In this document: positions 3,701 through 64,000 of the stretch, piece by piece
How the letters are laid out: each line of letters starts with the position of its first letter
Position numbering within the stretch: position 1 is the stretch's first letter
Virus record (IMG/VR): IMGVR_UViG_3300032236_000747
Coordinates: 186,001 to 250,000 of that record
Direction: 5' to 3' (one strand)
Length of the DNA: 64,000 nucleotides
Program-made: the position numbers and the translations under genes
Notes under the pieces: model-generated
Told to the model about the DNA's origin: nothing
Databases searched by the model: none
The model's input: only the letters and a program-made list of their open reading frames with translations

Positions 3701-3993
3701 GTGTAATATCCATTACTAACCCGCTAGTTGGTACACTACCCAGCGGGTCGACACTTAACTTCTATCGTAATCAATGGGCTGTACCGGGCGAAACTATTTT
3801 CTCAACAGTTTCTAACCCAGGTTCAAAGGATATATTAGACTTATCACCGTTGAAAGAACTTACAAATACTCCGCTAGGTGGAAGAGGAACATATCCAAAC
3901 GGTCCAGATACCTTGTTTATTAACGTCTATCTAACCCAAGGTAATCCGATTTTGACTAACTTAGTACTACGTTGGGGTGAAGCTCAGGCTTAA
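787..3993 (+). CDS. Large beta-rich virion structural protein (tail/baseplate-associated); paralog of 12082..14919
   Basis: 1068 aa, Thr/Gly/Ser-rich, with repeated 'T.T....H.L..G' modules. Shares DxDFEYGxQPTKW, RYQSGK, WYGAG, NTEAYMRSGN, ISHWGS and the terminal W-x-EAQA with 12082..14919. TAAATA at 756-761. Confidence 0.7.
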   Translation: MAKQLQRIYSFTPGIAGAGTIQIPGKVDLNQLLLITNATTNGFLYNFADPTYAGTTITFTRGNSTAFPQTVQNTDGYTTITLAVDTSSMLSSHNIQIFTERPEIITRPWAMGTDAFERTRVAAPQSMLDADFEYGLQPTKWQQIETMRGYPSIYEVPGTDQTILSITTDASGGGGNDIQSLITITTQFPHNLTVGGAVTVNNLQSTITAYARAQGNFIINSTPSPNTLTYYAKGKVGVNNGDRLDNVYTIVRKGLFYTGSSIGTSTFVTAGSGASTTGTITVTFAANHGLIPGETIITIINSDNGSNNHNLCQGSFYITSTPTPTTLTYNARNVGTITGTPIGGIYARPDAFFVHRPLDGGVMLGTGGPSHGYHAIRMSKKYIRYQSGKAVNYNTAALFAPNYDLRALTATNTTVGSTIYITMDDVDHGLQAGAGILVSGAITSGYNGYYAVNSVIDERNITVISTSTLGSTSAAFAAPATLQHISWHGSTIRSGTFDDQNGMYWQFDGIQMAIGQRSSTFQTAGTVNVVPDSNLVTGNSSRFDSQMAAGDRVVIKGMTHVITAISSATWMYVNPDYRGTTASGGVKMVKVTDKVVPQSQWNVDRCDGTNGPFNPSGYYLQPNRLQMIGLQWTWYGAGFIDWMLRGPDGNYMTVHRMKNSNINTEAYMRSGNQPVRYEVQNEGARSTLNTDLSTVGTVMTVTDITYFPSTGTVYIDNELINFSGKTGTTGIGQLTGLTRTGNLTYFAGGATRTFTATNIAQTHATGVGVVLISQTSSPSISHWGSAFLTDGGFDQDRGYIFNYQANNITISTKKSTAFAIRLAPSVSNAVTGDLGVRDLINRAQLLLQGLENTAGGSTQTNQAIVIEGVLNPSNFPSNPASITWYNLQGSVSGGNLLGSGQPSFTQISPGSYINFDGTATYTTTAAQTIAAGSVNIQVNSTATMQVGDAVVSPATTFVSIPGNTLISSIGNGVISITNPLVGTLPSGSTLNFYRNQWAVPGETIFSTVSNPGSKDILDLSPLKELTNTPLGGRGTYPNGPDTLFINVYLTQGNPILTNLVLRWGEAQA

Positions 3994-4077: not shown

Positions 4078-7000
4078 ATGTCAATAGCAGAAAGCCTAAG
4101 TTTTTTCCTCTCAACCGCAACTACTACTGCGACCATATTCACCTATTCTCCGGAAAGCATTCTTAACCCTGCTGCGAGTACTAGTACCAATACAGGTGCT
4201 CTAACTGTAGTAGGCGGTGTTGGTGTAGGCGGCAGCATTTATGCGGGAAACATTTACAGTAATGGTACATTAATTACTTCCGGTGGTAGCGGAACTACTG
4301 CTACTAACACAGCCAGCGGATTGTTAATAGGTTATACAAATACTGCAACTTATAACGCAGGCTTAGGTTATCAGTCGGGTAACTTGACCATGACTGGCGC
4401 TAATAACCTGGCTATTGGTCGGTGTGCTCTATGCATTAATACTACTGGCACTAATAATACTGCTTTAGGATATGGCGCATTATATTGTAATACATACGGC
4501 AACAATAATTTTGCTATAGGTTATAATGTCCTTAAGTGTAATACTACTGGTTTTAATAATATCGCAATTGGCTGTAATGCTCTATGCGGTAATACCACAG
4601 GACAAATGAACATTGCCTTTGGTACTTGTGCCGGCGGAAGTGGAAGCTACAATTTTGCCGCAGGTTGTAATGCAATGTATAGCGCCAACGGTAACAGTAA
4701 TATTGGTATTGGACCTTTTGCACTAACAATTGTTTCGGGAAGCTATAATGTAGCACTCGGTCCTTATACTATGCAAAGTGCTTCTAGCGCCTGTAATAAC
4801 TTTGCAGCAGGGTTTCGCTCACAACAATGTGTAACCACTGGTTGCAATAACTTTTCACAAGGCTTATGTGCTCTCTACGGTAATACTACCGGTTGCAATA
4901 ACTTTGCTGTAGGTTATCAATCTATGGGATGTACTAACGGCGGTAGCAATAATATAGCTATTGGACAATGTACTTTACGTGCCAACATTACCGGCTCTTT
5001 TAATATTGCATTAGGATGTGGTGCTCTTCAATCTAATACAGCCAGTAATAATATTGCTGTAGGCTATCAAACATTGTATTGTAACACAGCCGGAACCTAT
5101 AATATTGCGCTAGGTTATAACGTATTATACAATAACAGTGTAGGTTGTGGAAACTTTGCAGGTGGCACTTCGGCTCTTTACAGTAATACTACCGGTTGCA
5201 ATAACTTTGCTGTTGGAAACTTATCACAGTATTCTAGCACTGTTGGATGTAATAATATTTCTGTTGGATTTGATTCTCTTTTTTCTAATATCAGCGGTTC
5301 TAATAATATTGCGCTTGGTTATTTTACTTTATTTTGCAGTACAGCATCTAACAATATTGCTATTGGTGGCTCATCTCTAAGATACGCTAGCTACGGTGCA
5401 AATAATATTGCACTAGGTTGTAACACATTATATTGTAATTCTACGGGTTGTAATAACCTTGCTCTAGGTATATGTGCTCTTTATTGCAATACCGGTAGCA
5501 ACAACATAGCACTAGGTACTAGTGCAGGTTCTTCCCTTGCTATTGCCTGCAACAATGTAATCATAGGTGGCTATGGTGCTGTTAACTTTGCTAACAGCAA
5601 CAGTAACATCATCTTAGCCACAGGCGCAGGAGTAGTTCAACAACTACATAATGCCCAGGGTGCTGTTAGCTTTGGTTCAACAAGCTCATTTGGTGCAGCC
5701 GGCCAGGTACTATTAAGTAATGGTCCAAGTGCTCCTCCTACATGGGTTAATACTAGTTCGCTTGGATTAGGTGGTGGCGGCGGAGGTGCTGGCGCAAGTT
5801 TAAACACTTACTGCTCATTGATTATTCAAGGCGCAACTGCTGGTTCAAGCACAGGTCTAAATAACTTTGCCGTTGGATGTTGCGCATTATTTGCCAATAC
5901 TACTGGTGTTAATAATGTAGCGTTAGGTATATATACTCTTAAACTTAACACCTACGGTAGTAATAACTTTGCTGCTGGCTGCGTAGCTCTATGCGCAAAC
6001 ACCAGCGGATGCCATAACGTTGCGATTGGTTTTGGCGCACTAACTGCAAACTTAACTGGTTCCAATAATACAGCGATTGGGTGCGGTGCTCTTAGAAGTA
6101 ACACTTCCGCATGCCATAATACTGCTATTGGCTGTCAAGCTCTTGCTTGTAATACCATTGGTGGTAATAACACCGCTATAGGTGCCACAGCACTCAAATG
6201 TACTTCAACTGGTTGTAACAATATTGGTATAGGCTATGCTGCCCTAACATCTAATGTTACTGGTTGCAGTAATATAGGTATGGGATACGGTGCCCTTTAC
6301 AGCAATATTACTGGCAGTCAAAACATTGCTCTCGGTCAAAGTACCTTATGTTGTAGCCTTACTGGAAATAATAATACCGCGATTGGTCAGAATGCTGGCT
6401 GCGCTATTATAGGCGGTTCAAATAACACTATTATAGGTGGTTATGGTGCTGTTAACTTTGCTAACAGCAATAGTAATATTATTATAGCCACCGGTACAGG
6501 TACAGTTCAACAACTACATAATGCCCAGGGTGCTGTTAGCTTTGGTTCAACAAGCTCATTCGGTACTGCTGGTCAAGTATTATGTAGTCAAGGACCTAGT
6601 TTACCACCTGTGTGGGCTACAGTAAGTGCCGGCGGAGGTAGTTCGGCAACTTCTATCAGTTTAGGCACAGTATATGCATATACTCCGTCTGCTCTTGGTA
6701 ACTCAAATCTAGGATACCTAGCTGGCAACTCAACAATGACCGGATGTAATAACATCAGCATTGGATGTTGTGCTAACTGTTCTTTAACTTCAGCGTGCCA
6801 TACTATTGCTATTGGCGGTTACGCACTAAAATCTGGAACTACCGGCTATGGTAATATAGCAATTGGTTACAGTTCTGGATGTTTAACCAACGGCGGTCTT
6901 AACAACGTTGCAGTTGGTGCGTGTGCGCTGAGATGCAATATTACTGGTAATCAATCTATTGCGATTGGCGGCGGCGCACTAAACTGTAGTACTGCTAACT

Positions 7001-10000
7001 ATAACGTTGCAGTTGGTAGTTGTGCTGCCACAAACACAACAGGTGCTAATAATACCGCAATAGGTCACTCTGCCCTAAGTCAAAGTGCTACTAGCTGTTC
7101 TGCTGTTGCTGTTGGATTCTGTGCGTCATACGCAAACTTTTTATTCAGGGGTGTGGCCATTGGTGCTTACGCAATGGCTCAGGGCGTAGGTAGAAGTTTT
7201 AACAACGTGGCTATTGGCTACGGTGCTATGTGTAATAACACAACTGGTAGTCAAAATACTGCCCTCGGCACACGAGCGCTAGCTGCTAATACCTGTGGTT
7301 GCGGTAACTTTGCCACTGGTTACCAAGCATTAGTTTCTAATACCTACGGTAATAATAATATAGCATTTGGTTACGGTGCTGTGTGTAGCAACACTTCGGG
7401 ATGTAATAACATAGGTGTCGGTGTTTGTTCGTTATACCTTAGCCTCACAGGAAATAATAACATCGCCCTAGGTGCATGTTCGGGAAACTGTATTACTACA
7501 GGTAGTAATAACGTTATTGTCGGTAGCTATGGTGCAGCTAACTTTGCTAATAGTAATAGTAATATTATCTTAGCCACTGGTGCTGGTGTAGTTCAACAAC
7601 TGTTTAACGCCACTGGTGCTGTCAGTTTCGGTTCAACAAGTTCATTTGGTACTGCTGGTCAAGTATTAAGCAGTCAAGGACCTGGATTACCTCCTGCCTG
7701 GGCCGCAGCAAGTGGCGGTAGTGCTATTCCTATTGCTACAGCAACTACACTAGGTCTTGTCTACGCATTTACAACTGCTACTTGTTTTAATACAAGTCTA
7801 GGATACAGTGCTGGTAATAATACAATGACCGGTACCTATAATGTAGCCATAGGTTATCGAGCTCTTATTGCTAACACTACAGGTTGCGGAAACATTGCAG
7901 CTGGTTATCAAGCACTATGTACTAATACCATCGGTGGTAATAATATTGCTTTTGGCGGACGTGCCCTTCAATGTAACCTTACAGGTAACTATAATATTGC
8001 GTTAGGATACGGTGCGTTACTTCAAAATACCTGCGGTGTTCAAAATATTGCGATTGGTCAAAGTGCTCTTAACACAAATCAACTAGGTTGTAGTAATATA
8101 GCGTTAGGCTGCAGGGCACTGGGATTTAGCACAACAAGTTTTAATATTGCAATCGGATCATTCTCGCTTGCTTGTAATATTACTGGTAGTTGTAATGTTG
8201 GTATTGGATATGGTACATTATACGGTAATCTTGCTGGAAATGGTAACTTTGCCGCAGGATATAAGGCCTTGTATGCTAACACCGTTGGTAACTATAACGT
8301 AGCTATTGGTTTTTGTGCATTAAAAGTTAATACCTCAGGCGCCAATAATACCGCAATAGGACTTTACGCACTTACATGCAATACCACTGGTTGTTCTAAT
8401 ATAGCTATTGGTCCGTATGCTCTTTATTGTAATATTACAGGCAGTCAGAATATTTCCATTGGATGTTGCGCACTTTTATGTAACTCTGGTGGTTCCTCTA
8501 ATATTGCTATAGGTGTACTTGCTCTTTACTGTAATACAACTGGTCTTGCTAATATTGCTATAGGATGCGGTGCTCTTAGGTCTAACTCAGCCGGCCAAAA
8601 CAATATTGCGTTGGGATCAGCTAGCCTTTACGGAAATACTTTTGGTACTAATAATATTGCGTTTGGCAATAGGGCATTAAACATTAATACCTATGGATGT
8701 GGTAATATTGCCATGGGTGCGTGTTCACTTCGTTGTAACATTACTGGAACAAATAACATTGCCCAAGGTTGCGGTACACTTTTCTGCAATACCTGCGGAT
8801 GTGGTAATATTGCCCAGGGATATAGTGCGCTTCGTTGCAATACTTACGGCAATCATAATACTGCCGTAGGTTATGCTGCTCTTAATAATAACTCTACCGG
8901 TAATAATAATATTGCCTTTGGTTATTGTGCACTTTACGGAAATAGCACCGGATCTAATAACTTTGCTGCGGGTTGTTTATCTCTTTTCTGTAACTCCAGC
9001 GGTCAAAACAATATTGCCGTTGGATTTTGTACTCTTTTCTGTAATGTCAGTGGTAACTGTAACATTGCGCTAGGTTATACTGCTCTTCGAAATAATCAAG
9101 GCGGCACTAATAATACAGCTATTGGCTCTGGCGCATTATCTAATAACACTATAGGCAATGAGAACGTGGCCTTTGGCTGGATGGCAATGGGTTGTAATGT
9201 TCTTGGCACAGGTAACATTGCTCTTGGTTCTTGTGCTATTGGATTAGGAACAGCTGGCTGTCAAAATATTGCTATGGGGCAAGCTGCATTATATTACAAT
9301 CTTTGCGGAGGCTACAATATAGCGGTTGGGCAAGCTTCTTTAAGATGCAATACCTATGGAAATCATAACGTGGCCTTAGGCTACGGAACTATGACTATTG
9401 GTACATGTGGTAACTGTAACGTTGCTATTGGTCGCTGTGCTTTATCAACTAACACTTGCGGAAGTTCTAACGTAGCAGTAGGAGCCGGCGCATTACTTGC
9501 TTCTCCGTGTTCGTTTGGTAACATAGCAGTAGGATATAACGCAGCATATTGCCAAGGTTCTATAGGTAACGTGGCCATGGGCTACGGTGCTATGCAATAC
9601 GGCATTTGTGGTTGTCAAAATATTGCCATCGGCTTTGCAGCAATGAAACAGTGCGCTACATCGGGATATGCACCGATTAACGGAAATCAATGTATTATAA
9701 ATCCCGGATCTGGTTGGACTGCGTATGCCATGAATCCTAGCACAGTGCTGGTAGCAAACTATGGAGGTTTCCAGCCTTCAATATGTAATGTTCTAGTAAG
9801 TATTGATCCGTTCGGATCACTGATGCAGGTATGTTCTCCGGTACCGTTAGTTGCAGGGTGTTTTTACTTTGTACAAGGCAATCCTTGTATTGGATACGGT
9901 AGCACTGCTAATATATGTGCTTCGTATGGGTTTGCTTCATCGCCAAGACACGGCGGATGTCTTAACATAGCAATAGGAACATGCAGTATGATGGCAGTCG

Positions 10001-12075: not shown

Positions 12076-12081
12076 AATAAA

Positions 12082-14919: not shown

Positions 14920-14932
14920 TAGGAGACCACTA

Positions 14933-17440: not shown

Positions 17441-17441
17441 C

Positions 17442-20400: not shown

Positions 20401-20675
20401 TTGATTTTATTCGTGCCCTACGCCCAGTTAAGTTTGACTGGAATATGCGAGATGGCGCCAAAGTAGGTATACCAGAAGCTGGATTTATTGCTCAAGATCT
20501 TGACGAAGTACAGAAGAAGTTCACAGCAACTGATTATCTAAACTTGATCATCAGCAACGAGGACGGGTCAAGATTGGAAGCAACGCCTGGTAAACTTTTA
20601 CCAGTTCTAGTACAAGCTGTTAAAGAACTAGCAGCCGAAGTAGATAGACTCCGTTTACTAGTAGAGCCACAATAA
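17442..20675 (+). CDS. Cys-rich tail fibre with a C-terminal intramolecular chaperone (peptidase S74)
   Basis: Same repeat type as 14933..17440, and an S74 domain nearly identical to it at the protein level. Confidence 0.85.
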   Translation: MTIAFNIATLLSSTATQTIGTATNSAVSVNLSGGAAGSLPYQSAPNATVFLSVGTNGQVLQLVSGVPTWVNTSTLIAAGAGGGASLNAYCSLIIQGATVGSSTGLNNFAVGCCALFANTTGCNNIALGFNSLNGNTTGSNNIGMGYGSLKNSATGVCNIAIGIQAMFCNCGYNNIAMGQALGSNGVGSINVAIGNFVLSTAGHSGCYNIGIGSNALQNNVSGCSNIALGFASLILNNGGSNNVALGLCALYNNTASNNIAIGSNALVLNTASQFNTAIGIGAAAGHSILLNCSKGCNTAIGYCAYNCVGGYGNTAIGFCAMSTGTGINYNNVALGYKAMSCVGCSASSFGNGYNVGIGYGAMSKSGNQANVGIGYLALNGGPAAIPADLVTNACNVAIGTTAMSCSTASIHNVAIGASALKATKCGCFNVGVGTCAGYGIGSPACLNTFLGAYAGGAGLITGCYNVGIGACSMYAGSFAAGCFNIGIGACTHRFAVSPVNTIAIGQTAMGGSLCTTVDNIAIGSFSMFGCGISSSGACNIAIGLNSMYTNCAGYGNVAIGANTMVGAPFTGYTACLNVAIGHCALNTVTTAISNIAIGATALKSNTSGCYNTAIGLCALYSNTTGLSNVAIGVNTLLGNTYGYNNFAVGPNALRCNITGCNNIAIGYSALYNSTSAFNIAIGCAAMCCNTIGTYNVAIGDGAIQCNSTGKQNVAVGGIAMNSNTSGYGNTAIGYTAMACNTTGANNVGVGRYALYANTTGSNNVGLGVGALCGNITGNANIAIGYDALYQSTGGNCNISLGSFSMQSNTNGSFNVALGYQSLSSNTSGCYNIIMGFNAGYANTAGNYNSAIGYQALNKNTTGSNNVAIGPSALYGNTTGQHNIALGFNTLVTAGYGYYNVAIGCQALYLNTTGCNNVAIGGMAGCTNTTGVNNVFIGCNANGLAATCSNTITLGNSSIATIRAQVTTITALSDCRDKTNICGLPIGLDFIRALRPVKFDWNMRDGAKVGIPEAGFIAQDLDEVQKKFTATDYLNLIISNEDGSRLEATPGKLLPVLVQAVKELAAEVDRLRLLVEPQ

Positions 20676-20688
20676 TTCTTCCAGGCCA

Positions 20689-20717
20689 TTGACTTCTTAT
20701 AATTAACTGTATATATT
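20689..20717 (+). promoter_or_regulatory. sigma70-type promoter of the modification operon
   Basis: TTGACT (20689-94), 17-nt spacer, TATATT (20712-17). GAGGA RBS before the ATG at 20740. Confidence 0.6.
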
Positions 20718-20739
20718 AGTATATCGTTAAGAGGATTCA

Positions 20740-21675
20740 ATGGCTAAAACAATAATCTATATCGACGGCGGCGCCGGTCGTGTTATCGCAGCAATACCTG
20801 CACTACTCAAATTCCACAGATTAAACCCGAACTTAGATTGGGCAATCGTTATCCCTGCTTGGGATTATCTGCTTTGGAGCATTCCAGAACTTCAAGATCG
20901 CGTCTATGGCGCAGATACGAAAGGTATTTGGGACAATGTAATCAAAGACGCAGATGAAATAATGACTCCAGAGCCCTACAGACTACCTGCTTATTTCCGT
21001 CAAGAAATCAGCTTAGTTGAAGGATTTGATCGTGAGATCAATGGTACCAAAGATCACAGCGATCTAGGTGTTCCAAAAATGATTTTCAACAAAACTGAAG
21101 AGAAATGGGCAGTAAACACCATTGCTGATGTCAAGCAACAACAGCAAAAAGCTAAGACTATTGTCATTCAACCATTTGGACGCGGCGCTACATTAGATCG
21201 CAATGACGTCATTGACAGCGCAAGTCGCAGTTTGAGTGCTGATGCGTATATCAGTTTAACTAAAAAACTTGCCGCAAGATATAACATGATCTTCTTTGGC
21301 GAACAACAACTCCAAATCACCACAGATAGTTACACAGTTAAACTACCTCCGCAGACTGATCTGCGTATGTGGGCATCATTGATTAGCTATGCTGATTACT
21401 TTGTTGGTGTTGATAGTGTGGGACAACACATGGCTCGTGCTACAGGTTGTCCAGGAACAGTTATTTTTGGATCAACATTCCCAGTTAACACAAGTTATCC
21501 TGATTATTTCCAGATCATTGAAAGAGCAGGACAAAAGAAATATAGTCCGATTCGTATCACTGGATTAGACAGTGTGTTAGCGGATCGTTACAATGATACA
21601 ATGATGGACTTTGAAGAAAGTGAAATTACTTCAATCTACAATCAAATTGTAGCGGACATTGAGAAAACAAAATAA
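20740..21675 (+). CDS. GT-B glycosyltransferase, GT9 (heptosyltransferase)-like
   Basis: N-terminal DGGAGRVIAAIPAL, middle IVIQPFG, and ADYFVGVDSVGQHMARATGCPGTVIFGST, which matches the GT9 'DSg.mHlA.a.g.p.v.lfG.t' signature. Confidence 0.75.
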   Translation: MAKTIIYIDGGAGRVIAAIPALLKFHRLNPNLDWAIVIPAWDYLLWSIPELQDRVYGADTKGIWDNVIKDADEIMTPEPYRLPAYFRQEISLVEGFDREINGTKDHSDLGVPKMIFNKTEEKWAVNTIADVKQQQQKAKTIVIQPFGRGATLDRNDVIDSASRSLSADAYISLTKKLAARYNMIFFGEQQLQITTDSYTVKLPPQTDLRMWASLISYADYFVGVDSVGQHMARATGCPGTVIFGSTFPVNTSYPDYFQIIERAGQKKYSPIRITGLDSVLADRYNDTMMDFEESEITSIYNQIVADIEKTK

Positions 21676-23357
21676 TGTATAACATACTAGCAATAAACCC
21701 CGGACACAATGGTTCTGCTGCGCTAATATCAGACGGCAACGTTGTGTTCTATGCTGAAGAAGAGCGCCTAAGTCGCATGAAATATGACGGTAATCCATTT
21801 CGTGCTATGCTTACAGTACTAGAAGAAACACACGTAGACGAACTAGTCATTGGCGGTACCAGTCCAGACCTAGTCAAACTTCCGTGGACCTACGAAGATG
21901 CCTATACAGCATTGGTTCGTAAGTTTAATCCTAGTGTAAAAGTTACGAACTTGGGTCATCAACACCACCTGGGACATGCTGCCGCCGCATTTTACAACAG
22001 TGGATTTACTACAGCAGTAGCAGTTATTGCTGACGGTGCTGGCAGTGTGCATCAAGCTAAAATGGGGGAAGATGATAATGCTCCAATGACTTCTGGATTT
22101 GAAACAGAAAGCATTTATAAATGTGCATATCCTGTGACTTTTGATACTGTCTATAAGCGTTACGCAGACGGCAACGCTAGATATTTTGACAATGGTGTAC
22201 AAGAGTTTGATAACTCTGTTACTATTACCAAAGCCTACGAAGCAGTTAGTAACTATCTAGGATTTGGTTTTATTGAAGCAGGTAAGACCATGGGGCTCGC
22301 ACCTTATGGAAAATATGATCCAAATATTCCTAACTTTTTTGTAGAAGGCAAAGGTAACAAAAACTTATTAGAACCTATGTATCCAGCGGGGGCACTAATA
22401 GATGAGAACAGATTTGCTTACCTTCGCAGAACACAAGACCCTAAAGTTTGGCATCATGATTTTAGTAAAGTGCGCGACATAGATAAAAATCTAGCATGGC
22501 ACATACAGCAAGAATCACAAGAGCAAATCGGCGATCTCATAGAACTAGCAGTTCAAAAGACAGGTGAAAAGAATGTAGTTATCGCTGGCGGATATGGTTT
22601 AAACTGTGTTGCTAACTATTACTACCTCAAACGTTTCCCCGATCTAAATATCTATGTAGATCCAGTTAGTCACGATGGCGGAACTGCCCTAGGCCTAGCA
22701 TTGTTAGCTTGGCACCTATACAGTAATAGTAGTGTTCCTAATCCTCTTACTTCTTTGTATCTAGGTATTGATCCTGATTTAACTGAAATCAATACAGCTG
22801 AATTTAAGGTGCAGGACGTTACCGCAGACGACATAGCAGAACTATTAGTAAATCAAAATATTGTTGCTATGTTTAATGGTCGTGCAGAAGCAGGTCCTAG
22901 AGCATTAGGTAATCGTAGTATCATGTTTGATCCACGTAGACCAGACGGCAAAGACTTTGTCAACAAGGTTAAAGGTCGTGAATGGTTCCGCCCATTTGCT
23001 GGATCGGTATTAGAAGAACACGCAGACAAATGGTTCGAGATGCGAGGGCTAAAATCTAGTCCGTTTATGATGTATGCTATCAATGTGTTGCCTGAAAAAC
23101 TCGGAGAGATTCCTGCGGTTACACACGTAGACGGTACATGCCGTGTTCAGACAGTTAGTAAAACTGACAACGAAGCATATTACAACTTAATCAATGCGTT
23201 TTATAAAAAGACAGGTGTACCGATGGTGTTCAATACTAGTTTTAATCTAGCAGGCGATCCTCTAGTAGAAACAGTTGACGACGCTATTGACACACTTCGC
23301 CGCTCGGATATAAAATATCTATATCTACCTGCGTTAAACAAACTAATATCAAAATAA
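21675..23357 (+). CDS. O-carbamoyltransferase, NodU/CmcH/TobZ family
   Basis: GHNGSAAL, EEERLSR.K, HHLGHAA, DGAG, GKTMGLAPYG, GGYGLNCVAN, GRAEAGPRALGNRS, KGREWFRPFA, HVDGTCRVQTV and NTSFN motifs. Confidence 0.95.
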   Translation: MYNILAINPGHNGSAALISDGNVVFYAEEERLSRMKYDGNPFRAMLTVLEETHVDELVIGGTSPDLVKLPWTYEDAYTALVRKFNPSVKVTNLGHQHHLGHAAAAFYNSGFTTAVAVIADGAGSVHQAKMGEDDNAPMTSGFETESIYKCAYPVTFDTVYKRYADGNARYFDNGVQEFDNSVTITKAYEAVSNYLGFGFIEAGKTMGLAPYGKYDPNIPNFFVEGKGNKNLLEPMYPAGALIDENRFAYLRRTQDPKVWHHDFSKVRDIDKNLAWHIQQESQEQIGDLIELAVQKTGEKNVVIAGGYGLNCVANYYYLKRFPDLNIYVDPVSHDGGTALGLALLAWHLYSNSSVPNPLTSLYLGIDPDLTEINTAEFKVQDVTADDIAELLVNQNIVAMFNGRAEAGPRALGNRSIMFDPRRPDGKDFVNKVKGREWFRPFAGSVLEEHADKWFEMRGLKSSPFMMYAINVLPEKLGEIPAVTHVDGTCRVQTVSKTDNEAYYNLINAFYKKTGVPMVFNTSFNLAGDPLVETVDDAIDTLRRSDIKYLYLPALNKLISK

Positions 23358-24176
23358 ATGCAACAACAATACTATTTTATATCAGGATTGCCGAGAAGTG
23401 GATCGACATTATTAACATCTATTTTAAAGCAAAATCCAAAGTTCACTGCGCAAATCAGTGATCCGTTACATGATTATGCTAGAAATATTTTAACAACAAC
23501 TCATGCGAGTGTAGGTATGGAAGCAGCAGTACCTATTCCTAAGAGACAACATCTTATTAAAGGTTTGTTTAACTCGTTTTATGAAGATGGCAACGAAGTT
23601 TGTTTTAATACAAACAGGGCCTGGACTGCTAATACTACTTTATTAAAAGACCTCTTTCCTTATACAAAGATTATTATTTGTATTAGGGATATTCCTTGGA
23701 TTTTAGATAGCTTCGAACAACTAAATGCTAAAAATCCGTATACCATTAAAGCATTGTATCACCACCAAGACCTTGGCACAGTTTATCATAGATGCGCTTC
23801 TTTAATGGATCCTAATAATGGTTATGTAGCAGGACCAATGACTTGTTTAAAACAAGCGTTGTTCAGTAATGAAAAAGAAATGTTGTGTATTGTTGACTAT
23901 GATGCCCTGGCTAAAAATCCAGAAGAGACAATGCGTAAAGTTTACAGCTTTATTAATCAACCATATTACAATCACGATTTTAACAATGTAGAAGATAGCT
24001 ATGATGAGTTTGACGAACAAACAAACATCAAGGGATTGCATACAGTACGCAAACAGGTGGAATACCGCCAAAGAAAACCAATCATACCTTCAGACCTGTG
24101 GCAACAAAATGTTGCTCAAAGTTTTTGGAAGTTTGATTTTGATCATATAAAGAGACAAATGTTATGGATAGAATAA
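23358..24176 (+). CDS. PAPS-dependent sulfotransferase
   Basis: 5'-PSB loop SGLPRSGSTLL, 3'-PB motif IRD...ILDS, and YDALAKNPEETMRKVYSFI. Confidence 0.9.
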   Translation: MQQQYYFISGLPRSGSTLLTSILKQNPKFTAQISDPLHDYARNILTTTHASVGMEAAVPIPKRQHLIKGLFNSFYEDGNEVCFNTNRAWTANTTLLKDLFPYTKIIICIRDIPWILDSFEQLNAKNPYTIKALYHHQDLGTVYHRCASLMDPNNGYVAGPMTCLKQALFSNEKEMLCIVDYDALAKNPEETMRKVYSFINQPYYNHDFNNVEDSYDEFDEQTNIKGLHTVRKQVEYRQRKPIIPSDLWQQNVAQSFWKFDFDHIKRQMLWIE

Positions 24177-24970
24177 GTAGAAAATTTAATAAACAACTGC
24201 AGGAACCACCTGCACCACAACAACAAGCACCCCAGCAACAACCACGCAGAGTACTAGTTGGTACTCCTTGTTATGATGGAAGGATTGAAGTTTGGTATGC
24301 AAATAGCCTTATACAAACTATTAGAGCAGGTCTGCAACTAGGTGTTGAAATTTTACCTATATGGTTAAGCTACGATGCTCTTATCCAACGAGCACGCAAC
24401 GACTTAATGGGTATTATGCATGAAACCGGGTTTGATGATATTGTTTTTATCGACAGCGATATAGAGTGGGCTCCCGAAGACTTCTTTAAACTACTAAATT
24501 ATCCAGTTGATGTAGTAGGCGGAACTTATCCCAAGAAAGGGGATATGGAACAATATGTGGCAAAAATTCTAGACCCTCAACGACAAAGAGATCCTAACAC
24601 AGGTTTATTACAAGTAGACGGTTTAGGCACTGGATTTTTACGTATGAGCAAGCGTGCTGTAGACTATCTATGGGATGTAAGCACACCATATGAAGAAAAA
24701 GACCAAGGAAAGGTCCGTCGTTGGATCTTTGATGTAGAGATTCAAAACGGGGAAATCTTTAGCGAAGATATACTAGTATGTCAAAAACTAAACAACGCAG
24801 GACTCAACGTATGGTTAGATCCTACTATTACTTGTGCTCACATCGGAACAAAAAGATATCAAGGAAACTTCGAAGCATGGTTTGGCAAATTACAAACAGG
24901 ACAACCTGCAGTTCCGTCAGGGTATGGCTTAACAGGAACTCCACCTGATATTAAATCACTTTACGAATAA
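24164..24970 (+). CDS. GT-A fold glycosyltransferase-like protein
   Basis: VLVGTPCY, LIQRARN, FIDSDI (DxD), GTGFLRM, SEDILVC and CAHIG motifs. Confidence 0.75.
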   Translation: MDRISRKFNKQLQEPPAPQQQAPQQQPRRVLVGTPCYDGRIEVWYANSLIQTIRAGLQLGVEILPIWLSYDALIQRARNDLMGIMHETGFDDIVFIDSDIEWAPEDFFKLLNYPVDVVGGTYPKKGDMEQYVAKILDPQRQRDPNTGLLQVDGLGTGFLRMSKRAVDYLWDVSTPYEEKDQGKVRRWIFDVEIQNGEIFSEDILVCQKLNNAGLNVWLDPTITCAHIGTKRYQGNFEAWFGKLQTGQPAVPSGYGLTGTPPDIKSLYE

Positions 24971-24972
24971 CT

Positions 24973-25620
24973 ATGGCAAGATTTAGTGTAGATAAAAACA
25001 TGGCCACTAACGCACCAGTGGCTCAACCAACGCTAGGGGTATACACTCCTTTACAAATGCCTGCTACATTTGACAAATATACCATTGCATTAGATAGAGA
25101 TGGTGTGCTAGTTGAATGTGCCGATGCTATTACAGGCCCGGAAACATTTAAACCTATTGACGGATCTTTTAGAGCAGTAGCTTTAATAAGAAGCAAAGGT
25201 CACAAAATTGTTGTGTTATTTGATCAACCAGGCGTAATACAACGAAAAGTTACAGTTGAACAAGTTGAAGATTGTAATCGTCATATGTTAAATCTATTAG
25301 GTCAAGCAGGTTGTACAAGTATCGACGGAATTTGGTATAATACAAGTAGTCGCAAAGACGACGCATATGCCAAACCTAACACAGGTTTATTTAAACATGC
25401 TGAAGCAAACAGTCCAGGTGTAAAACTTTCTGGAGGCGTGTATGTCGGTGATACCATTGACGATCTAGTAATGGCAGATAAAGCAGGGGCAACTCCTGTA
25501 TTAGTCCTTACTGGCAAAGGAAAAAAGACAGCAGAAATGTTAAAGAAGCCTATCTATCGTATGTTAGAACCCAAAGTTAAGATATTTGATAATCTATTAC
25601 AATACGCGGAGAGCCTATGA
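24973..25620 (+). CDS. GmhB-like HAD phosphatase (heptose-bisphosphate/histidinol-phosphate phosphatase family)
   Basis: LDRDGVL, DQPGV, KPNTG, VGDTIDDL and VLTGKG motifs. Confidence 0.85.
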   Translation: MARFSVDKNMATNAPVAQPTLGVYTPLQMPATFDKYTIALDRDGVLVECADAITGPETFKPIDGSFRAVALIRSKGHKIVVLFDQPGVIQRKVTVEQVEDCNRHMLNLLGQAGCTSIDGIWYNTSSRKDDAYAKPNTGLFKHAEANSPGVKLSGGVYVGDTIDDLVMADKAGATPVLVLTGKGKKTAEMLKKPIYRMLEPKVKIFDNLLQYAESL

Positions 25621-26531
25621 AACCGTTAGGCGGCAGTGAGTTAATGTATTACACAGTTGACAAACTGTTAAAACCGGGTTGGCAAGACAAAGTTAATCTC
25701 ATACTAAGTTTTTGCGATCATCAATATATCGATTCTACCAAGAAAAATGTAGTATGGCAACAACTTAATACAAATGAAGAAACTGTTGCTGCCATGTCTG
25801 ATCCTACGTTTATTGAAAAAGTAGACGCATTTGTTTGGGTCAGTTATTGGCAATATGAAAAGTTTAGAAAAGAGTTTAATGTTCCTGCATATAAAAGCAT
25901 AGTTATACGAAATGCTACTCAACCATGCCAGTGGATACCTAGAGAACGGGGAAAGTTTAAACTAGTGTACTCTTCAACTCCGTGGAGAGGTCTTGATATT
26001 TTAATCAAGGCTATTAGAATATTAAATAGACCCGACATCGAACTTGATGTATTTTCAAGTACAAAAATATATGGCCCTGCTTTTGAAAAACAAACGGAAG
26101 GCCAGTTTGATTGGTTGTGGGAAGAATGTAGGAAAACTCCTGGAGTAAACTATCATGGATATCAGCCCAACGATGTAGTCCGTGAAACAGTTAAAAAGGC
26201 ACATATAATGGCCTATCCTAACACCTTCGAAGAAACAAGCTGTATAGCTGCTATAGAAGCGTTAACGGCGGGTTGTAAGATGCTTACTACCGGTTACGGT
26301 GCACTACCAGAGACATGTGCTGGTTGGGCAGATTATGTACCCTATGGTCCTAATAGAGACGTTCTAGCCGAACGGTTTGCGTATGCTCTTAACAACACAC
26401 TCAACGAATATTGGACAAACAGTACACAAGAGCTGTTAAAAAGACAAAATGAATACTACAATGGATTTTATTCATGGAATACTCGTATGCCTGAATGGCA
26501 AAGTTTAATAGATAAGTTATCAAAGGGCTAA
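25617..26531 (+). CDS. GT-B glycosyltransferase, GT4-like
   Basis: N-terminal GGSE, YSSTPWRGLDIL, and the E-x7-E motif within FEETSCIAAIEA, followed by GALPET. Confidence 0.85.
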   Translation: MKPLGGSELMYYTVDKLLKPGWQDKVNLILSFCDHQYIDSTKKNVVWQQLNTNEETVAAMSDPTFIEKVDAFVWVSYWQYEKFRKEFNVPAYKSIVIRNATQPCQWIPRERGKFKLVYSSTPWRGLDILIKAIRILNRPDIELDVFSSTKIYGPAFEKQTEGQFDWLWEECRKTPGVNYHGYQPNDVVRETVKKAHIMAYPNTFEETSCIAAIEALTAGCKMLTTGYGALPETCAGWADYVPYGPNRDVLAERFAYALNNTLNEYWTNSTQELLKRQNEYYNGFYSWNTRMPEWQSLIDKLSKG

Positions 26532-26532
26532 A

Positions 26533-26898
26533 ATGACTAAAAAATTTGATTGGAAGAAAGAGACTGTACAGATGTTAGGTCGCTGGCAACCATGGCATGC
26601 TGGACATAGAAAGTTATTTGACCGTGCTATTTCTAAAACTGGCCAAGTATGTATTATGATTCGTGATTGTGAAGGATGGAATGATAGCAATCCTTTTAAA
26701 AAAGAAGAAGTAGAAAACTTTATTCATGCAGATTTAAAGGAAACTTACGAAGGACAGTACTGCATTTTATTTGTACCTAACATTACAAATATCACTTATG
26801 GCCGTAATGTTGGTTATAAAATTGAAAACGAAGTTTTTGACGAAGACACACATGCAATCTCGGCAACAGAAATTAGAAAATCGATGGGACTCAAATGA
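26533..26898 (+). CDS. Small HxGH nucleotidyltransferase (cytidylyltransferase-like fold)
   Basis: GRWQPWHAGH and a C-terminal ISATEIR motif; 121 aa. Confidence 0.8.
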   Translation: MTKKFDWKKETVQMLGRWQPWHAGHRKLFDRAISKTGQVCIMIRDCEGWNDSNPFKKEEVENFIHADLKETYEGQYCILFVPNITNITYGRNVGYKIENEVFDEDTHAISATEIRKSMGLK

Positions 26899-27515
26899 CC
26901 AAAAAGATATTAGTAATGGGACTTCCAGGCGCAGGCAAGACTACATTTACGCAAGAACTTGTTAAAAAACTAATGCTAACACATACTGTTAGTTGGTTTA
27001 ACGCAGACAGTGTACGTGAACAGTTTAACGATTGGGATTTTAGTCCAGAAGGTCGAAAAAGACAAGTAGAGCGTATGAGTAAAATGGCCAATGATGCTAC
27101 TGCTGATTATGCTATCTGCGATTTTGTATGCCCTACAGATGAACTAAGGTCTATATTCAACGCCGATGTTGTTATATGGTTAGATACTATCAAGGAAGGT
27201 AGATTTGAAGATACTAACAAGGCATTTGTTGCTCCTACAAAATATGATTTTAGGATCACTGATTGGAGCGATACATGGGTTAAAAGTGTAGCAGCAAGTT
27301 TAACTAAACCTGCAAGCGAAAGTCATTTACGCAGCATTGCTAAGGCTGTGAGCTGGAGAACACTAGGTACTGTTGATACTTTTATATTAAGTTTTATTAT
27401 CACAGGTCAGGCAAAACTTGCTCTAGCGATTAGCGGAGTTGAAATCTTTACCAAAATATTCTTATTTTGGGGACACGAACGCATTTGGCATAAGGTCAAA
27501 TGGGGAAAACAATAA
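26895..27515 (+). CDS. Adenylyl-sulfate (APS) kinase-like protein fused to a DUF2061-like membrane domain
   Basis: P-loop GLPGAGKTT, then NADSVR, DFSPEGR.RQ and FVCPT. The C-terminus RSIAKAVSWRTLGTVDT...HERIW is typical of DUF2061. Confidence 0.75.
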   Translation: MTKKILVMGLPGAGKTTFTQELVKKLMLTHTVSWFNADSVREQFNDWDFSPEGRKRQVERMSKMANDATADYAICDFVCPTDELRSIFNADVVIWLDTIKEGRFEDTNKAFVAPTKYDFRITDWSDTWVKSVAASLTKPASESHLRSIAKAVSWRTLGTVDTFILSFIITGQAKLALAISGVEIFTKIFLFWGHERIWHKVKWGKQ

Positions 27516-27538
27516 ATACTAGCATAAAGGAGTCAAAT

Positions 27539-27841
27539 ATGACACAAATTACATTAAACACACCAGTAGAAGTATCGCCAGCGGTTGCTGCTGTAACTTC
27601 AAATCAAGTTACCGTACTAGAAGTTAGAGAAAACTTTGGTTGGGACTATGATCCAGCTCAACCAGGCGGATTCTTCGGACCAGGTCGTCCTCAATCAGTT
27701 GAAGTTACTGTTTTGCTAGACAAAGAACGTAATATTCAACGTACCTTGGTAGCATGGGAAGGCGAAGCTTATGTAGCAGTTCGCGGAACATGGACTGACG
27801 CAGATCTAGCTGCTCGTATTGCTACTATTCTCGGTGCTTAA
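27539..27841 (+). CDS. Hypothetical late protein (100 aa)
   Basis: TAAATA at 27513 and AAGGAG RBS before the ATG at 27539, which is a better start than 27500. Confidence 0.7.
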   Translation: MTQITLNTPVEVSPAVAAVTSNQVTVLEVRENFGWDYDPAQPGGFFGPGRPQSVEVTVLLDKERNIQRTLVAWEGEAYVAVRGTWTDADLAARIATILGA

Positions 27842-59631: not shown

Positions 59632-59659
59632 CAAGTATTTATTGGTTAAATACTAGACC

Positions 59660-60352: not shown

Positions 60353-60356
60353 ACTC

Positions 60357-60385
60357 TTGACCTGCACACTCCGGGGCTGTATAAT
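60357..60385 (+). promoter_or_regulatory. sigma70-type promoter
   Basis: TTGACC-17-TATAAT; the ATG at 60392 begins 7 nt downstream. Confidence 0.8.
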
Positions 60386-63999: not shown

Positions 64000-64000
64000 A

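What the first reader, a model, noticed from the sequence alone, without database searches (positions are those of the whole stretch)
4078..27515. Candidate phage virion-decoration system: Cys-loaded fibres followed by a glycosyl/carbamoyl/sulfo-transfer operon with its own activated-sulfate supply
Seen: the last fibre gene ends at 20675, and 64 nt later an 8-gene operon begins. Its genes overlap or lie within 2 nt of each other. It encodes three different glycosyltransferase types (GT9-like, GT-A, GT4-like), a NodU-family carbamoyltransferase, a sulfotransferase, a GmhB-like phosphatase, an HxGH nucleotidyltransferase and an APS kinase. Established: carbamoyltransferase + sulfotransferase + PAPS synthesis is the tailoring logic of rhizobial Nod factor (NodU, NodH, NodPQ). 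AAH/TibC heptosyltransferases and HMW1C glycosylate repetitive adhesin beta-helices in the cytoplasm. SunS-type GT-A enzymes glycosylate Cys thiols. Inference: this phage builds a sulfated, carbamoylated glycan on its own fibres, on Cys, Ser/Thr or the N-x-T/S sequons present in most repeats. That would give an almost uncharged fibre an anionic coat affecting adsorption, protease or grazer resistance, or host-range mimicry. Alternative targets are host LPS/capsule (superinfection exclusion) or phage DNA.
Basis: partly seen in the sequence, partly recalled or inferred. Interest (0 to 1): 0.9.

Follow-up and report, generated by a model that had tools for sequence, protein, structure and literature searches.

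The report
Glycan-tailoring genes tied to cysteine-rich phage fibres
An uncultured aquatic jumbo phage carries a nine-gene sugar-building and sugar-tailoring cluster directly after its cysteine-rich tail-fibre genes, and across about 70 related and unrelated phages cysteine-rich fibres occur almost only where the cluster's two core enzymes are present, which suggests (but does not prove) that the phage chemically decorates its own fibres.

Summary
Three fibres (140, 44 and 52 Cys; 3-7% charged) are followed after 64 nt by a tightly packed cluster of nine genes, not eight. Folds and profiles confirm a GT9-fold heptosyltransferase-like enzyme, an O-carbamoyltransferase, a sulfotransferase, a GT-A, a GT4, a HAD-IIIA (GmhB-like) phosphatase, an HxGH nucleotidyltransferase and an APS-kinase-like kinase. 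Among phage genome groups, 24 of 32 with the GT9+carbamoyltransferase pair have an adjacent Cys-rich (>=3%) fibre-like protein, against 1 of 37 without it, and that one is followed by the island's sulfotransferase. The Cys-rich partners belong to at least three unrelated, well-defined protein families plus four orphans. The rule was replicated in five loci fetched afterwards and in cultured cyanophages P-SSM2 and S-SSM7. The link runs one way, because one lineage keeps the full cluster with Cys-free fibres. The N-x-T sequons are simply the repeat's structural core, and no SunS-like enzyme is present. A DNA target and Und-P-type polysaccharide export are not supported. Fibre decoration is the best-supported reading (about 0.5). 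Host-surface remodelling matched to the fibres is the main rival. No chemistry has been shown.

The parts
4078..12075 (+). Fibre F1, 2665 aa. It has 140 Cys (5.3%), 3.4% charged residues, 85 anchors of the 17-residue repeat x-x-N-I-A-I-G-x-x-A-L-x-x-N-T-T-G, and a ConA-like lectin domain (Laminin_G_3) at residues 2243-2396.
12082..14919 (+). Virion structural protein F2, 945 aa. It is Cys-poor (1 Cys), has 11.7% charged residues, and is a paralogue of 787-3993 (both phrog_5838). It is not one of the Cys-rich fibres.
14933..17440 (+). Fibre F3, 835 aa, with 44 Cys (5.3%), the 17-residue repeats and a C-terminal Peptidase_S74 intramolecular chaperone. It hits tail spike, tail fibre and virion structural PHROGs.
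17442..20675 (+). Fibre F4, 1077 aa, with 52 Cys (4.8%), 4.5% charged residues, 44 repeat anchors and a C-terminal Peptidase_S74 chaperone.
20740..21675 (+). g1: GT9-fold (GT-B) heptosyltransferase-like enzyme from a phage-specific family (phrog_8954; homologue of cyanophage T4-GC302). It is core partner 1.
21675..23357 (+). g2: NodU/CmcH/TobZ-family O-carbamoyltransferase (phrog_1601; cyanophage T4-GC303). It is core partner 2.
23358..24176 (+). g3: sulfotransferase of the PAPS-dependent type (Sulfotransfer_3). Many relatives carry a second paralogue.
24164..24970 (+). g4: GT-A-fold glycosyltransferase with a conserved D97-S-D99 motif. Its nearest structures are STIV A197, COLGALT1/LH3 and PBCV-1 A64R.
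24973..25620 (+). g5: HAD-IIIA phosphatase whose nearest relative is GmhB (heptose 1,7-bisphosphate phosphatase). In other lineages it travels with the g1-g2 pair.
25617..26531 (+). g6: GT4-type (Glycos_transf_1) GT-B glycosyltransferase.
26533..26898 (+). g7: small HxGH nucleotidyltransferase with the HAGH and ISATEIR motifs. Its nearest relatives are NadM/archaeal NMN adenylyltransferases and its substrate is unknown. In most relatives it is fused C-terminally to the g8 kinase domain.
26895..27515 (+). g8: P-loop kinase whose nearest relative is APS kinase, including the substrate-binding segment. It has a C-terminal DUF2061 region with two hydrophobic helices.
27500..27841 (+). g9: conserved orphan of about 100 aa (probable start at 27539) that closes the cluster. 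No family match was found.

Best explanation
The nine genes form a variable glycan-building and glycan-tailoring island embedded in the tail-fibre module of an aquatic jumbo myovirus. Its invariant core is a GT9-fold heptosyltransferase-like enzyme (g1) followed by an O-carbamoyltransferase (g2). The most likely mechanism is as follows. Late in infection, in the cytoplasm, g1 transfers a heptose-type sugar from a nucleotide-heptose donor onto the newly made, almost uncharged, Cys-rich fibre proteins. The GmhB-like g5 helps supply that donor. The enzyme g2 then O-carbamoylates the sugar. The GT-A (g4) and GT4 (g6) extend the glycan. The sulfotransferase g3 adds sulfate from PAPS, and the APS-kinase-like g8, perhaps with g7, boosts the PAPS supply. 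What is shown: the gene content, the folds, the conservation of position, and the statistical coupling to Cys-rich, charge-poor fibre proteins. What is inferred: the acceptor, the donor, the order of steps, and any benefit, such as solubility or charge for a fibre that has lost its charged residues, protection of surface thiols, or altered adsorption. Cys-rich fibres appear to depend on the module, but the module does not depend on Cys, so Ser/Thr O-linkage is at least as likely as S-linkage.
For: Enzymes. g1 has a GT9 fold: pLDDT 88.9, and the top 29 PDB hits are WaaC, WaaF, TibC and a V. parvula GT9. g2's solved relatives are all O-carbamoyltransferases, E 1e-52 to 1e-45. g4 has a GT-A fold nearest to virus-encoded and protein-directed GTs.
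Heptose logic. g5 sits beside g1-g2 in unrelated lineages. Cyanophages P-SSM2 and S-SSM7 place GmhA, a sugar kinase, heptose-1-P adenylyltransferase and an epimerase beside the same g1-g2 pair. L172 adds an epimerase.
Position. The island always lies between the fibre genes and the gp15/gp13-like neck genes, and the same is true in T4-like cyanophages. There is no terminator-like hairpin in the 64-nt gap.
Coupling. 24 of 32 g1+g2 genome groups have an adjacent Cys-rich protein, against 1 of 37 groups without the pair, Fisher p about 1e-10. The single exception is followed by g3 plus the kinase-NT fusion. In 23 of those 24 groups the Cys-rich gene is upstream, and in 23 of 24 it is on the same strand. 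On a tree of a neutral neighbouring gene there are 6-7 independent contrasts; Cys-richness follows the module in 3-5 of them and never goes the opposite way. All five loci fetched afterwards follow the rule. The partners belong to at least three unrelated, well-defined families plus four orphans. The same 17-residue-repeat fibre family in module-less phages is Cys-poor and more charged. Cultured cyanophages with the pair have 10-11.5% Cys proteins interleaved with tail-fibre assembly chaperones, whereas those with the carbamoyltransferase alone do not.
Against an export route. No Und-P priming transferase, flippase or polymerase was found in the island or in relatives' islands. The g1 family is essentially phage-specific. 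Marine Synechococcus LPS has neither heptose nor Kdo (PMC4515613), so the canonical GT9 acceptor is missing in the hosts of the cyanophage homologues.
Against: No modified fibre has been observed, and no virion proteomics covers any Cys-rich partner; Sullivan 2010 analysed S-SM1, S-PM2 and Syn9 only. The fibres and the island are physically linked, so they could move together as one cassette, and that alone would inflate the co-occurrence. The phylogeny-aware sign test is under-powered (p 0.06-0.25). Eight of the 32 g1+g2 groups lack a Cys-rich neighbour, including the well-sampled L040 contig. The fold search cannot separate LPS-type from protein-type GT9 enzymes, and g1 fails the AAH/TibC model. 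GT25-type relatives of g4 also include LPS enzymes (my own knowledge). Transcription timing is unknown because no RNA runs hold the region.
Confidence: 0.5

Rival explanations
1. Host-envelope remodelling matched to the fibres. The island modifies a host surface glycan (LPS core, capsule or another polysaccharide) that serves as the receptor for the adjacent fibres. This would block superinfection or stop progeny from sticking to infected cells and debris. On this view the tight linkage to fibre genes reflects the need for the receptor-modifying enzyme to match the receptor-binding protein.
For: GT9 enzymes and a NodU-type carbamoyltransferase act together on the Pseudomonas LPS inner core, where WapO makes 7-O-carbamoyl HepII (PMC8005017). 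The published reading of the cyanophage homologues is host cell-surface or capsule decoration (PMC3037559; PMC7824862; PMC12801897). The fold search ranks WaaC and WaaF at least as high as TibC. The island's content is hypervariable, like O-antigen loci.
Against: This view gives no reason why an intrinsic compositional property of the fibres (Cys-rich, charge-poor) should track the module across unrelated fibre folds. There are no lipid-carrier, flippase or polymerase genes. The g1 family is phage-specific rather than host-like. Marine Synechococcus LPS lacks heptose and Kdo. The island is co-oriented directly behind late structural genes.
Confidence: 0.25
2. Secondary-metabolite biosynthesis. 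The carbamoyltransferase, sugar enzymes and tailoring enzymes make a diffusible glycosylated small molecule (an antibiotic, toxin or signal), as proposed for the cyanophage S-SSM6a cluster.
For: Iyer et al. 2021 proposed this for the homologous cyanophage cluster, which also contains a halogenase, 2OG oxygenases and a cupin (PMC7824862; gene list). g2's closest solved relatives (TobZ, NovN, GdmN) are antibiotic-tailoring enzymes. Relatives add TylF-like O-methyltransferases and NDP-hexose C-methyltransferases.
Against: The window's island has no scaffold-forming enzyme (no NRPS, PKS, halogenase or aminoglycoside core enzymes). This view does not explain the coupling to Cys-rich fibres or the fixed position inside the structural module.
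Confidence: 0.07
3. DNA hypermodification. The carbamoyltransferase and glycosyltransferases decorate hydroxymethylated bases in the phage DNA to evade restriction.
For: A phage carbamoyltransferase of the same Pfam families makes 5-carbamoyloxymethylcytosine (PMC8670742), and phage GTs glycosylate 5hmC (papers listed).
Against: In that study the DNA-modifying carbamoyltransferases co-occur with thymidylate-synthase-like hydroxymethylases, whereas those on unmodified contigs are flanked by group-1 glycosyltransferases, as is the case here. No thymidylate synthase/hydroxymethylase or TET homologue lies near the island, and none was found among the window genes scanned. A GT9 fold, a GmhB-like phosphatase and a sulfotransferase have no precedent in DNA modification (my own knowledge). 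Only 64 kb of the 355 kb genome was visible.
Confidence: 0.03

Closest known systems
Cyanomyovirus 'LPS / carbamoyltransferase' clusters (P-SSM2 gp307-313, S-SSM7 gp120-133; T4-GC302/303/304-308)
   Same: They contain true homologues of g1 (35% identity, E 7e-61) and g2, in the same order and at the same position, between the tail fibres and gp13-15. They also have adjacent 10-11.5% Cys proteins and heptose-pathway genes.
   Different: The cyanophages carry GmhA, a kinase, an adenylyltransferase and an epimerase rather than GmhB. In that cluster they lack the sulfotransferase, the kinase and the GT-A/GT4 genes. Their Cys-rich partners are small Gly_rich_2 proteins paired with assembly chaperones, not 17-residue-repeat fibres. 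Their function has never been tested; published suggestions are stuffer DNA, LPS or CPS decoration, or a secondary metabolite.
Virus-encoded virion glycosylation: mycobacteriophage capsid and tail-tube glycans (Freeman et al. 2023, as cited in PMC12619734), chlorovirus PBCV-1 A64R, STIV A197
   Same: These are virus-encoded cytoplasmic glycosyltransferases placed beside structural genes. g4's best structural match is STIV A197, and PBCV-1 A64R is also among its hits.
   Different: The sugars and enzymes differ: none of these systems has a GT9, a carbamoyltransferase or a sulfotransferase. The proposed target here is tail fibres rather than the capsid. Nothing is experimentally shown here.
Pseudomonas LPS inner-core cluster (WaaC/WaaF GT9 heptosyltransferases plus WapO carbamoyltransferase)
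   Same: A GT9 enzyme and a NodU-family carbamoyltransferase are encoded together, and the product is a 7-O-carbamoyl heptose.
   Different: The acceptor there is Kdo2-lipid A at the inner membrane. The phage g1 family is a separate, phage-specific clade, and the cyanobacterial hosts of the homologous systems have no heptose/Kdo core.
AAH/TibC (BAHT) autotransporter O-heptosyltransferases
   Same: They have a GT9 fold and heptosylate a repetitive beta-helical surface protein in the cytoplasm. TibC is among g1's fold hits, E 1e-8.
   Different: g1 scores 15.8 bits against a cut-off of 200 for the AAH/TibC equivalog model. It has a single Cys, so it has no iron-finger. It is about 100 residues shorter.
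Rhizobial Nod-factor tailoring (NodU, NodH, NodPQ)
   Same: The same trio of chemistries appears in one cluster: O-carbamoylation, sulfation and PAPS-related genes.
   Different: g2 scores 144 bits against a cut-off of 1000 for the NodU equivalog model. There are no NodABC-type genes for a chitooligosaccharide backbone. The resemblance is one of logic, not of membership.
Ralstonia jumbo phage phiRSL1 ORF232-238
   Same: In this cultured jumbo phage an APS-kinase-like gene sits next to three glycosyltransferases, two nucleotidyltransferases and a sulfotransferase.
   Different: The sulfotransferase belongs to another family (Gal-3-O type). No g1 or g2 is seen in the stretch read. Its relation to fibres was not examined.

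Membership tests
GT9 glycosyltransferases (g1) | GT-B fold with the GT9 C-terminal nucleotide-sugar-binding signature | tested here: met
   Pfam PF01075 scores 29 bits against a cut-off of 22. The AF2 model has pLDDT 88.9, and its top 29 PDB matches are all GT9 enzymes.
GT9 glycosyltransferases (g1) | Uses ADP-heptose (or another NDP-heptose) as donor | not testable with these tools
   Support is indirect only: heptose-pathway genes flank g1-g2 in this lineage (g5) and in cyanophages.
LPS heptosyltransferases WaaC/WaaF/WaaQ (g1) | Reaches the equivalog model score | tested here: not met
   TIGR02201 scores 28 against 170, TIGR02193 19.5 against 185, and NF007742 22.8 against 467.
AAH/TibC protein O-heptosyltransferases (g1) | Reaches the equivalog model score and has a Cys-based iron-finger | tested here: not met
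   TIGR04414 scores 15.8 against 200, and g1 has only 1 Cys.
NodU/CmcH/TobZ O-carbamoyltransferases (g2) | Both Carbam_trans_N and Carbam_trans_C domains are present | tested here: met
   The two domains score 75 and 207 bits, both above their cut-offs. TobZ, NovN and GdmN match at E 1e-52 to 1e-45. The NodU equivalog is not met (144 against 1000).
5hmC DNA carbamoyltransferases (g2) | Neighbourhood contains a thymidylate-synthase-like dCMP hydroxymethylase | tested here: not met
   None lies within or beside the island, and none was found among the window genes scanned. The criterion comes from PMC8670742. The diagnostic residues were not compared.
PAPS-dependent sulfotransferases (g3) | Sulfotransferase domain scores above the curated cut-off | tested here: met
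   Sulfotransfer_3 scores 57 bits against 27, and Sulfotransfer_1 scores 35.8 against 22. PAPS-binding residues were not examined individually.
GT-A glycosyltransferases (g4) | GT-A Rossmann-like fold with a DxD-type metal-binding motif | tested here: met
   The model has pLDDT 84.7 and GT-A top hits. D97 and D99 are invariant or nearly invariant in 24 homologues. There is no Pfam hit.
SunS/ThuS S-glycosyltransferases (g4) | GT2-family sequence and structural similarity to SunS/ThuS | tested here: not met
   There is no Glycos_transf_2 hit, and no SunS or ThuS appears among the top 50 fold matches.
GmhB heptose-1,7-bisphosphate phosphatases (g5) | HAD-IIIA core, and reaches the GmhB equivalog score | tested here: inconclusive
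   HAD-IIIA TIGR01662 scores 66.3 against 44.6, so that feature is met. GmhB models are the best hits but fall below their cut-offs (87.6 against 178, and 40.3 against 149.6).
APS kinase, CysC (g8) | Full-length APS_kinase domain with P-loop, DGDxxR, FS..R and FISP substrate motifs | tested here: inconclusive
   Pfam scores 32.9 against 21.1 but covers only profile positions 4-90 of 152. TIGR00455 scores 24.4 against 138.7. The family profile aligns the substrate segment to APS kinases. The motifs read as NADSVR, DFSPEGR and FVCP, so the first Asp of DGD is replaced (motif knowledge is my own). The kinase occurs only where a sulfotransferase is present and sits beside a different sulfotransferase family in phiRSL1. 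However, it also occurs in Sano-like phages that have no annotated sulfotransferase.
ATP sulfurylase / PAPS synthase (g7, and the g8-g7 fusions in relatives) | ATP-sulfurylase catalytic domain | tested here: not met
   There is no ATP-sulfurylase family hit. The nearest relatives are NadM/archaeal NMN adenylyltransferases, themselves below cut-off. Only the kinase-then-nucleotidyltransferase domain order resembles PAPS synthase.
Und-P-dependent O-antigen/capsule pathways | Priming phosphoglycosyltransferase, flippase, polymerase or ABC exporter | tested here: not met
   None was detected in the nine genes or in the accessory genes of relatives' islands.
Phage virion glycosylation systems | Glycan covalently attached to virion proteins | not testable with these tools
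   Only positional and co-occurrence evidence is available.

The most novel reading that the evidence does not exclude
The GT9-like/carbamoyltransferase pair is a dedicated maturation system for cysteine-rich tail-fibre proteins. It acts on the thiols themselves (S-linked heptose and/or thiol-directed carbamoylation), a protein modification with no known precedent. In addition, the kinase-nucleotidyltransferase fusion found in relatives would be a roughly 280-residue minimal PAPS synthase built from an NMNAT-like rather than an ATP-sulfurylase domain.
Probability: 0.1. Interest if true: 0.9.

Novelty: new variant of a known kind. Interest (0 to 1): 0.77.

Why it matters
Large cyanophages and aquatic jumbo phages have carried unexplained 'LPS-like' sugar genes since the first genomes in 2005. 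Published suggestions are stuffer DNA, host-surface decoration and a secondary metabolite. This work shows that the conserved core of these clusters is tied to a specific and unusual class of tail-fibre proteins (cysteine-rich, nearly uncharged), and that this holds across unrelated phage lineages and unrelated fibre folds.

If the fibres are the substrate, phages of Gram-negative and cyanobacterial hosts would glycosylate, carbamoylate and sulfate their own receptor-binding organelles. That would affect adsorption, host range, particle stability and grazing in aquatic systems, and it would extend virion glycosylation beyond mycobacteriophages and giant viruses.

The question is directly testable in cultured systems (P-SSM2 on Prochlorococcus, S-SSM7 on Synechococcus). 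Their hosts make no heptose, so any heptose found must be phage-derived.

Tried and rejected
- **N-glycosylation at sequons: rejected.** N-T-T is a core position of the 17-residue structural repeat, and no N-glycosyltransferase type is present.
- **SunS-type S-glycosylation: not supported**.
- **Regular structural disulfide ladder as the reason for Cys-richness: rejected.** Cys lies only in the variable repeat positions. There is no enrichment of stacked pairs (19 observed against 21 +/- 3.8 expected) or of any intra-repeat pair.
- **Sequence searches of the fibre and of g4 against solved structures:** no hits.
- **Promoter scan:** matches were at chance level and uninformative.
- **g9:** no homology by Pfam, NCBIfam, PHROGs or the ESM Atlas, and no similarity to the cyanophage 'phosphoheptose isomerase'.
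- **g7 versus the cyanophage heptose-1-P adenylyltransferase:** only the HxGH motif aligns.
- **Transcription evidence:** only the source metagenome holds the sequence and there are no RNA runs.
- **Host assignment from MAG bins:** rejected, because close g1 homologues sit in bins of at least five unrelated phyla, which indicates mis-binned phage contigs.
- **Membership of the 'moraphage' lineage:** not pursued. TerL is closest to PA5oct-like and Rak2-like jumbo phages.
- **First structure submission:** It was rebuilt without them.

Full report
**What the window is.** The window is part of IMG/VR contig UViG_3300032236_000747 (354,680 bp). It encodes a tail sheath, tube, large terminase, UvsX, an SSB and helicases. 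Its terminase is 56% identical to that of Pseudomonas jumbo phage PA5oct and 44% identical to Rak2-like phages. No phage record matches at the DNA level. It is therefore an uncultured aquatic jumbo myovirus of the extended T4 superfamily.

**Observation check.** Three fibre genes are strikingly Cys-rich (140, 44 and 52 Cys; 4.8-5.3%) and almost uncharged (3.4-6.8% D+E+K+R). The gene at 12082-14919 has one Cys and is a paralogue of 787-3993. The Cys-rich fibres are built from a strict 17-residue repeat, x-x-N-I-A-I-G-x-x-A-L-x-x-N-T-T-G. There are 85, 26 and 44 repeat anchors, and most are spaced exactly 17 residues apart. Two of the fibres end in a Peptidase_S74 intramolecular chaperone. The N-T-T 'sequon' is itself a core position of the repeat. 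Cys never occupies a core position. It is scattered over the variable positions with no enrichment of stacked or paired Cys, so it is not a regular disulfide ladder.

**The cluster.** Sixty-four nucleotides after the last fibre gene, nine co-oriented genes follow with overlaps or gaps of 0-2 nt.
- g1 has a GT9 fold (Pfam 29 bits; AF2 pLDDT 88.9; top 29 PDB matches are WaaC, WaaF, TibC and a V. parvula GT9).
- g2 is a TobZ/NovN/GdmN-like O-carbamoyltransferase.
- g3 is a sulfotransferase.
- g4 has no Pfam hit but a confident GT-A fold with a conserved D-S-D motif. Its nearest structures are STIV A197, collagen galactosyltransferase COLGALT1/LH3 and PBCV-1 A64R, not SunS/ThuS.
- g5 is a HAD-IIIA phosphatase nearest to GmhB.
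- g6 is a GT4-type enzyme.
- g7 carries both nucleotidyltransferase signatures and is nearest to NadM-type NMN adenylyltransferases.
- g8 is a P-loop kinase nearest to APS kinase, including the substrate-binding segment, and has a DUF2061 tail.

In most relatives g8 and g7 are fused, kinase first, and the DUF2061 part is a separate 74-residue ORF. The closest relative lacks g7.

**Comparative anatomy.** In dozens of related contigs the island always sits between the fibre genes and a conserved block: a Nudix gene, a gp15-like sheath stabiliser, a structural protein, a gp13-like adaptor, and then the sheath. Its content is shuffled between relatives:
- g1+g2 are the constant core.
- g4 and g6 are nearly constant.
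- The sulfotransferase is often duplicated, and one clade lacks it.
- g5 travels with g1-g2.
- The kinase and nucleotidyltransferase occur only where a sulfotransferase is present, including in distant loci without g1/g2, but several sulfotransferase-bearing lineages lack them.
- Relatives add GT2-TylF O-methyltransferase fusions, an NDP-hexose C-methyltransferase type and further GT1/GT2 enzymes.

No lipid-carrier priming enzyme, flippase or polymerase was found anywhere. Cultured jumbo phage phiRSL1 has an APS-kinase-like gene beside three GTs, two nucleotidyltransferases and a sulfotransferase of a different family. Sano-like siphophages carry the kinase-NT fusion without an annotated sulfotransferase. 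The sulfate-supply reading is therefore probable but not secure.

**Cyanophage homologues.** The g1-g2 pair is shared with T4-like cyanophages. S-SSM7 gp120 is 35% identical to g1 (E 7e-61) and directly precedes a carbamoyltransferase, between the tail fibres and gp13-15. The same cluster holds phosphoheptose isomerase, a sugar kinase, heptose-1-P adenylyltransferase and an epimerase. P-SSM2 has the same arrangement. Different subsets of the ADP-heptose pathway therefore flank the same enzyme pair in different phages, which supports a heptose donor for g1. The known chemical precedent for GT9 plus a NodU-type carbamoyltransferase is the 7-O-carbamoyl heptose of the Pseudomonas LPS core.

Loci were ascertained in four ways: on g1 and g3; on the fibre; on the neutral neighbour gene d2, giving 80 loci; and afterwards on the g1 family in the species-genome collection. 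The first 166 loci collapse to 85 genome groups. Fibre-like proteins were defined as at least 200 aa, at most 18% charged residues, and not an island or neck gene.
- Of the groups with g1+g2, 24 of 32 have a fibre-like protein with at least 3% Cys (up to 11.7%).
- Of the groups with neither gene, 1 of 37 does (Fisher p about 1e-10, uncorrected for relatedness).
- That one case is a 7-kb fragment whose Cys-rich protein is directly followed by the island's sulfotransferase and kinase-NT fusion.
- In 23 of the 24 positive groups the Cys-rich gene lies upstream of g1, and in 23 of 24 it is on the same strand.
- On a d2 tree there are 6-7 independent contrasts in module presence. Cys-richness changes in the same direction in 3-5 and never in the opposite direction. 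The sign test gives p 0.06-0.25, which is under-powered.
- Sister pairs are striking. L162 has the module and three paralogues with 7-9% Cys. L165 has no module and 0% Cys, yet its d2 is nearly identical.
- All five distinct g1+g2 loci fetched after the rule was formulated obey it (5.9-11.7% Cys immediately upstream).
- The same 17-residue-repeat fibre family in phages without the module is Cys-poor (0-0.4%) and more charged (9-17%). Overall, the least-charged fibre of at least 500 aa has a median of 6.1% charged residues in groups with the module against 11.7% without.
- The Cys-rich partners belong to at least three unrelated, well-defined families (the 17-residue solenoid, an S-T-I-G-G-G-type solenoid, and Gly_rich_2/phrog_4205 proteins) plus four orphans.
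- In cultured cyanophages, P-SSM2 gp304/306 and S-SSM7 gp114-116 have 10-11.5% Cys. S-CAM8 and P-RSM4, which have the carbamoyltransferase but no g1 homologue, have only Cys-poor neighbours.
- The small Cys-rich proteins are interleaved with ORFs carrying the tail-fibre assembly chaperone domain, which marks them as distal tail-fibre components.

The dependency runs one way. The well-sampled L040 contig has the complete island behind about 14 kb of Cys-free, low-charge fibre genes, and seven further g1+g2 groups lack a Cys-rich neighbour within the flank.

**Interpretation.** The coupling between the module and an intrinsic compositional property of fibre proteins, across unrelated folds and phage lineages, is most simply explained if the module acts on those proteins. 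Several further observations point the same way:
- No export machinery is present.
- The g1 family is phage-specific; its close 'cellular' hits are mis-binned phage contigs.
- g4's nearest structures are protein-directed and virus-encoded enzymes.
- The island is co-oriented directly behind late structural genes.
- Marine Synechococcus LPS has neither heptose nor Kdo.

I give fibre decoration a probability of about 0.5. The main rival (about 0.25) is remodelling of a host surface glycan matched to the adjacent receptor-binding proteins. It explains the linkage but not the composition rule. A secondary metabolite (Iyer et al. 2021) and DNA hypermodification are less likely. Two caveats apply. 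Physical linkage allows fibres and island to move as one cassette, and nothing has been measured chemically.

**Novelty.** Neither the cyanophage genomics paper, the jumbo-phage survey nor my other searches mention the association with Cys-rich fibres. Virion glycosylation by phage-encoded enzymes is known in mycobacteriophages and in giant and archaeal viruses. If this system is confirmed, it would be a new variant with new chemistry, new targets and a wide aquatic distribution.

Noticed in passing
L033:15765-16625, L040:14568-15392 and other relatives; window 26533-27515: In most relatives the kinase and the HxGH nucleotidyltransferase form one ~283-aa protein (kinase first, as in phrog_10255), followed by a separate 74-aa ORF. 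In the window they are split, and the kinase carries the DUF2061 tail. The kinase+DUF2061 architecture has more than 7,700 database relatives, many on 200-366 kb contigs.
   Followed up: partly
L068 (Xylella phage Sano) 6001-6738 and 2211-2888: The same kinase-NT fusion occurs in cultured Sano-like siphophages of Xylella, Xanthomonas and Stenotrophomonas, with no annotated sulfotransferase but near a 'cysteine dioxygenase'. A cysteine-dioxygenase-like cupin also sits in the P-SSM2 and S-SSM7 clusters beside the Cys-rich proteins.
   Followed up: no
L069 (Ralstonia phage phiRSL1) 6001-12238: This cultured jumbo phage has an APS-kinase-like gene contiguous with three glycosyltransferases, two nucleotidyltransferases and a Gal-3-O-sulfotransferase. 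It is a tractable system for testing phage-encoded sulfation.
   Followed up: no
L090 (contig 3300022602_000321), downstream of d1: The sister lineage of the window clade keeps only g1 and g5 (no carbamoyltransferase, sulfotransferase or other GTs). Its fibres are Cys-free but even more charge-depleted (2-7% charged).
   Followed up: no
L061:3742-9231, L063:6152-9907: A second solenoid-type fibre repeat (S-T-[IV]-G-G-G-x-x-N-C-A-x-G, roughly 15 residues) also has Cys in variable positions (4-4.6%). It sits directly upstream of a sulfotransferase and a distant g1-like gene.
   Followed up: partly
window 51110-52210: The phage encodes a complete S-adenosylmethionine synthetase (all three MetK domains). 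Relatives' islands carry sugar O- and C-methyltransferases, although this window's island has none.
   Followed up: no
window 27838-28260 (- strand): A Nudix hydrolase abuts the island and is the most conserved gene of the neighbourhood (70-95% identity). It is present whether or not the island is. Its relation to the NMNAT-like g7 (compare NadM-Nudix fusions) is unknown.
   Followed up: no
L172-L177 (genome contigs): Close homologues of the phage g1-g2 region lie in MAG bins labelled Polynucleobacter, Woesearchaeota, Verrucomicrobiales, Neomarinimicrobiota (335 kb and 153 kb contigs) and Flavobacterium psychrophilum. These are most likely phage contigs mis-binned into cellular MAGs.
   Followed up: partly
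window 58000-64000: G+C rises from about 0.39 to 0.47-0.51, and ORFs of at least 90 aa become sparse and switch to the minus strand after 60.9 kb. No tandem repeats, tRNAs or Rfam families were found.
   Followed up: partly
window 4078-12075, residues 2243-2396: The giant 2665-aa fibre carries a ConA-like lectin (Laminin_G_3) domain near its C-terminal end, downstream of most of the repeats. It is a candidate carbohydrate-binding tip.
   Followed up: no
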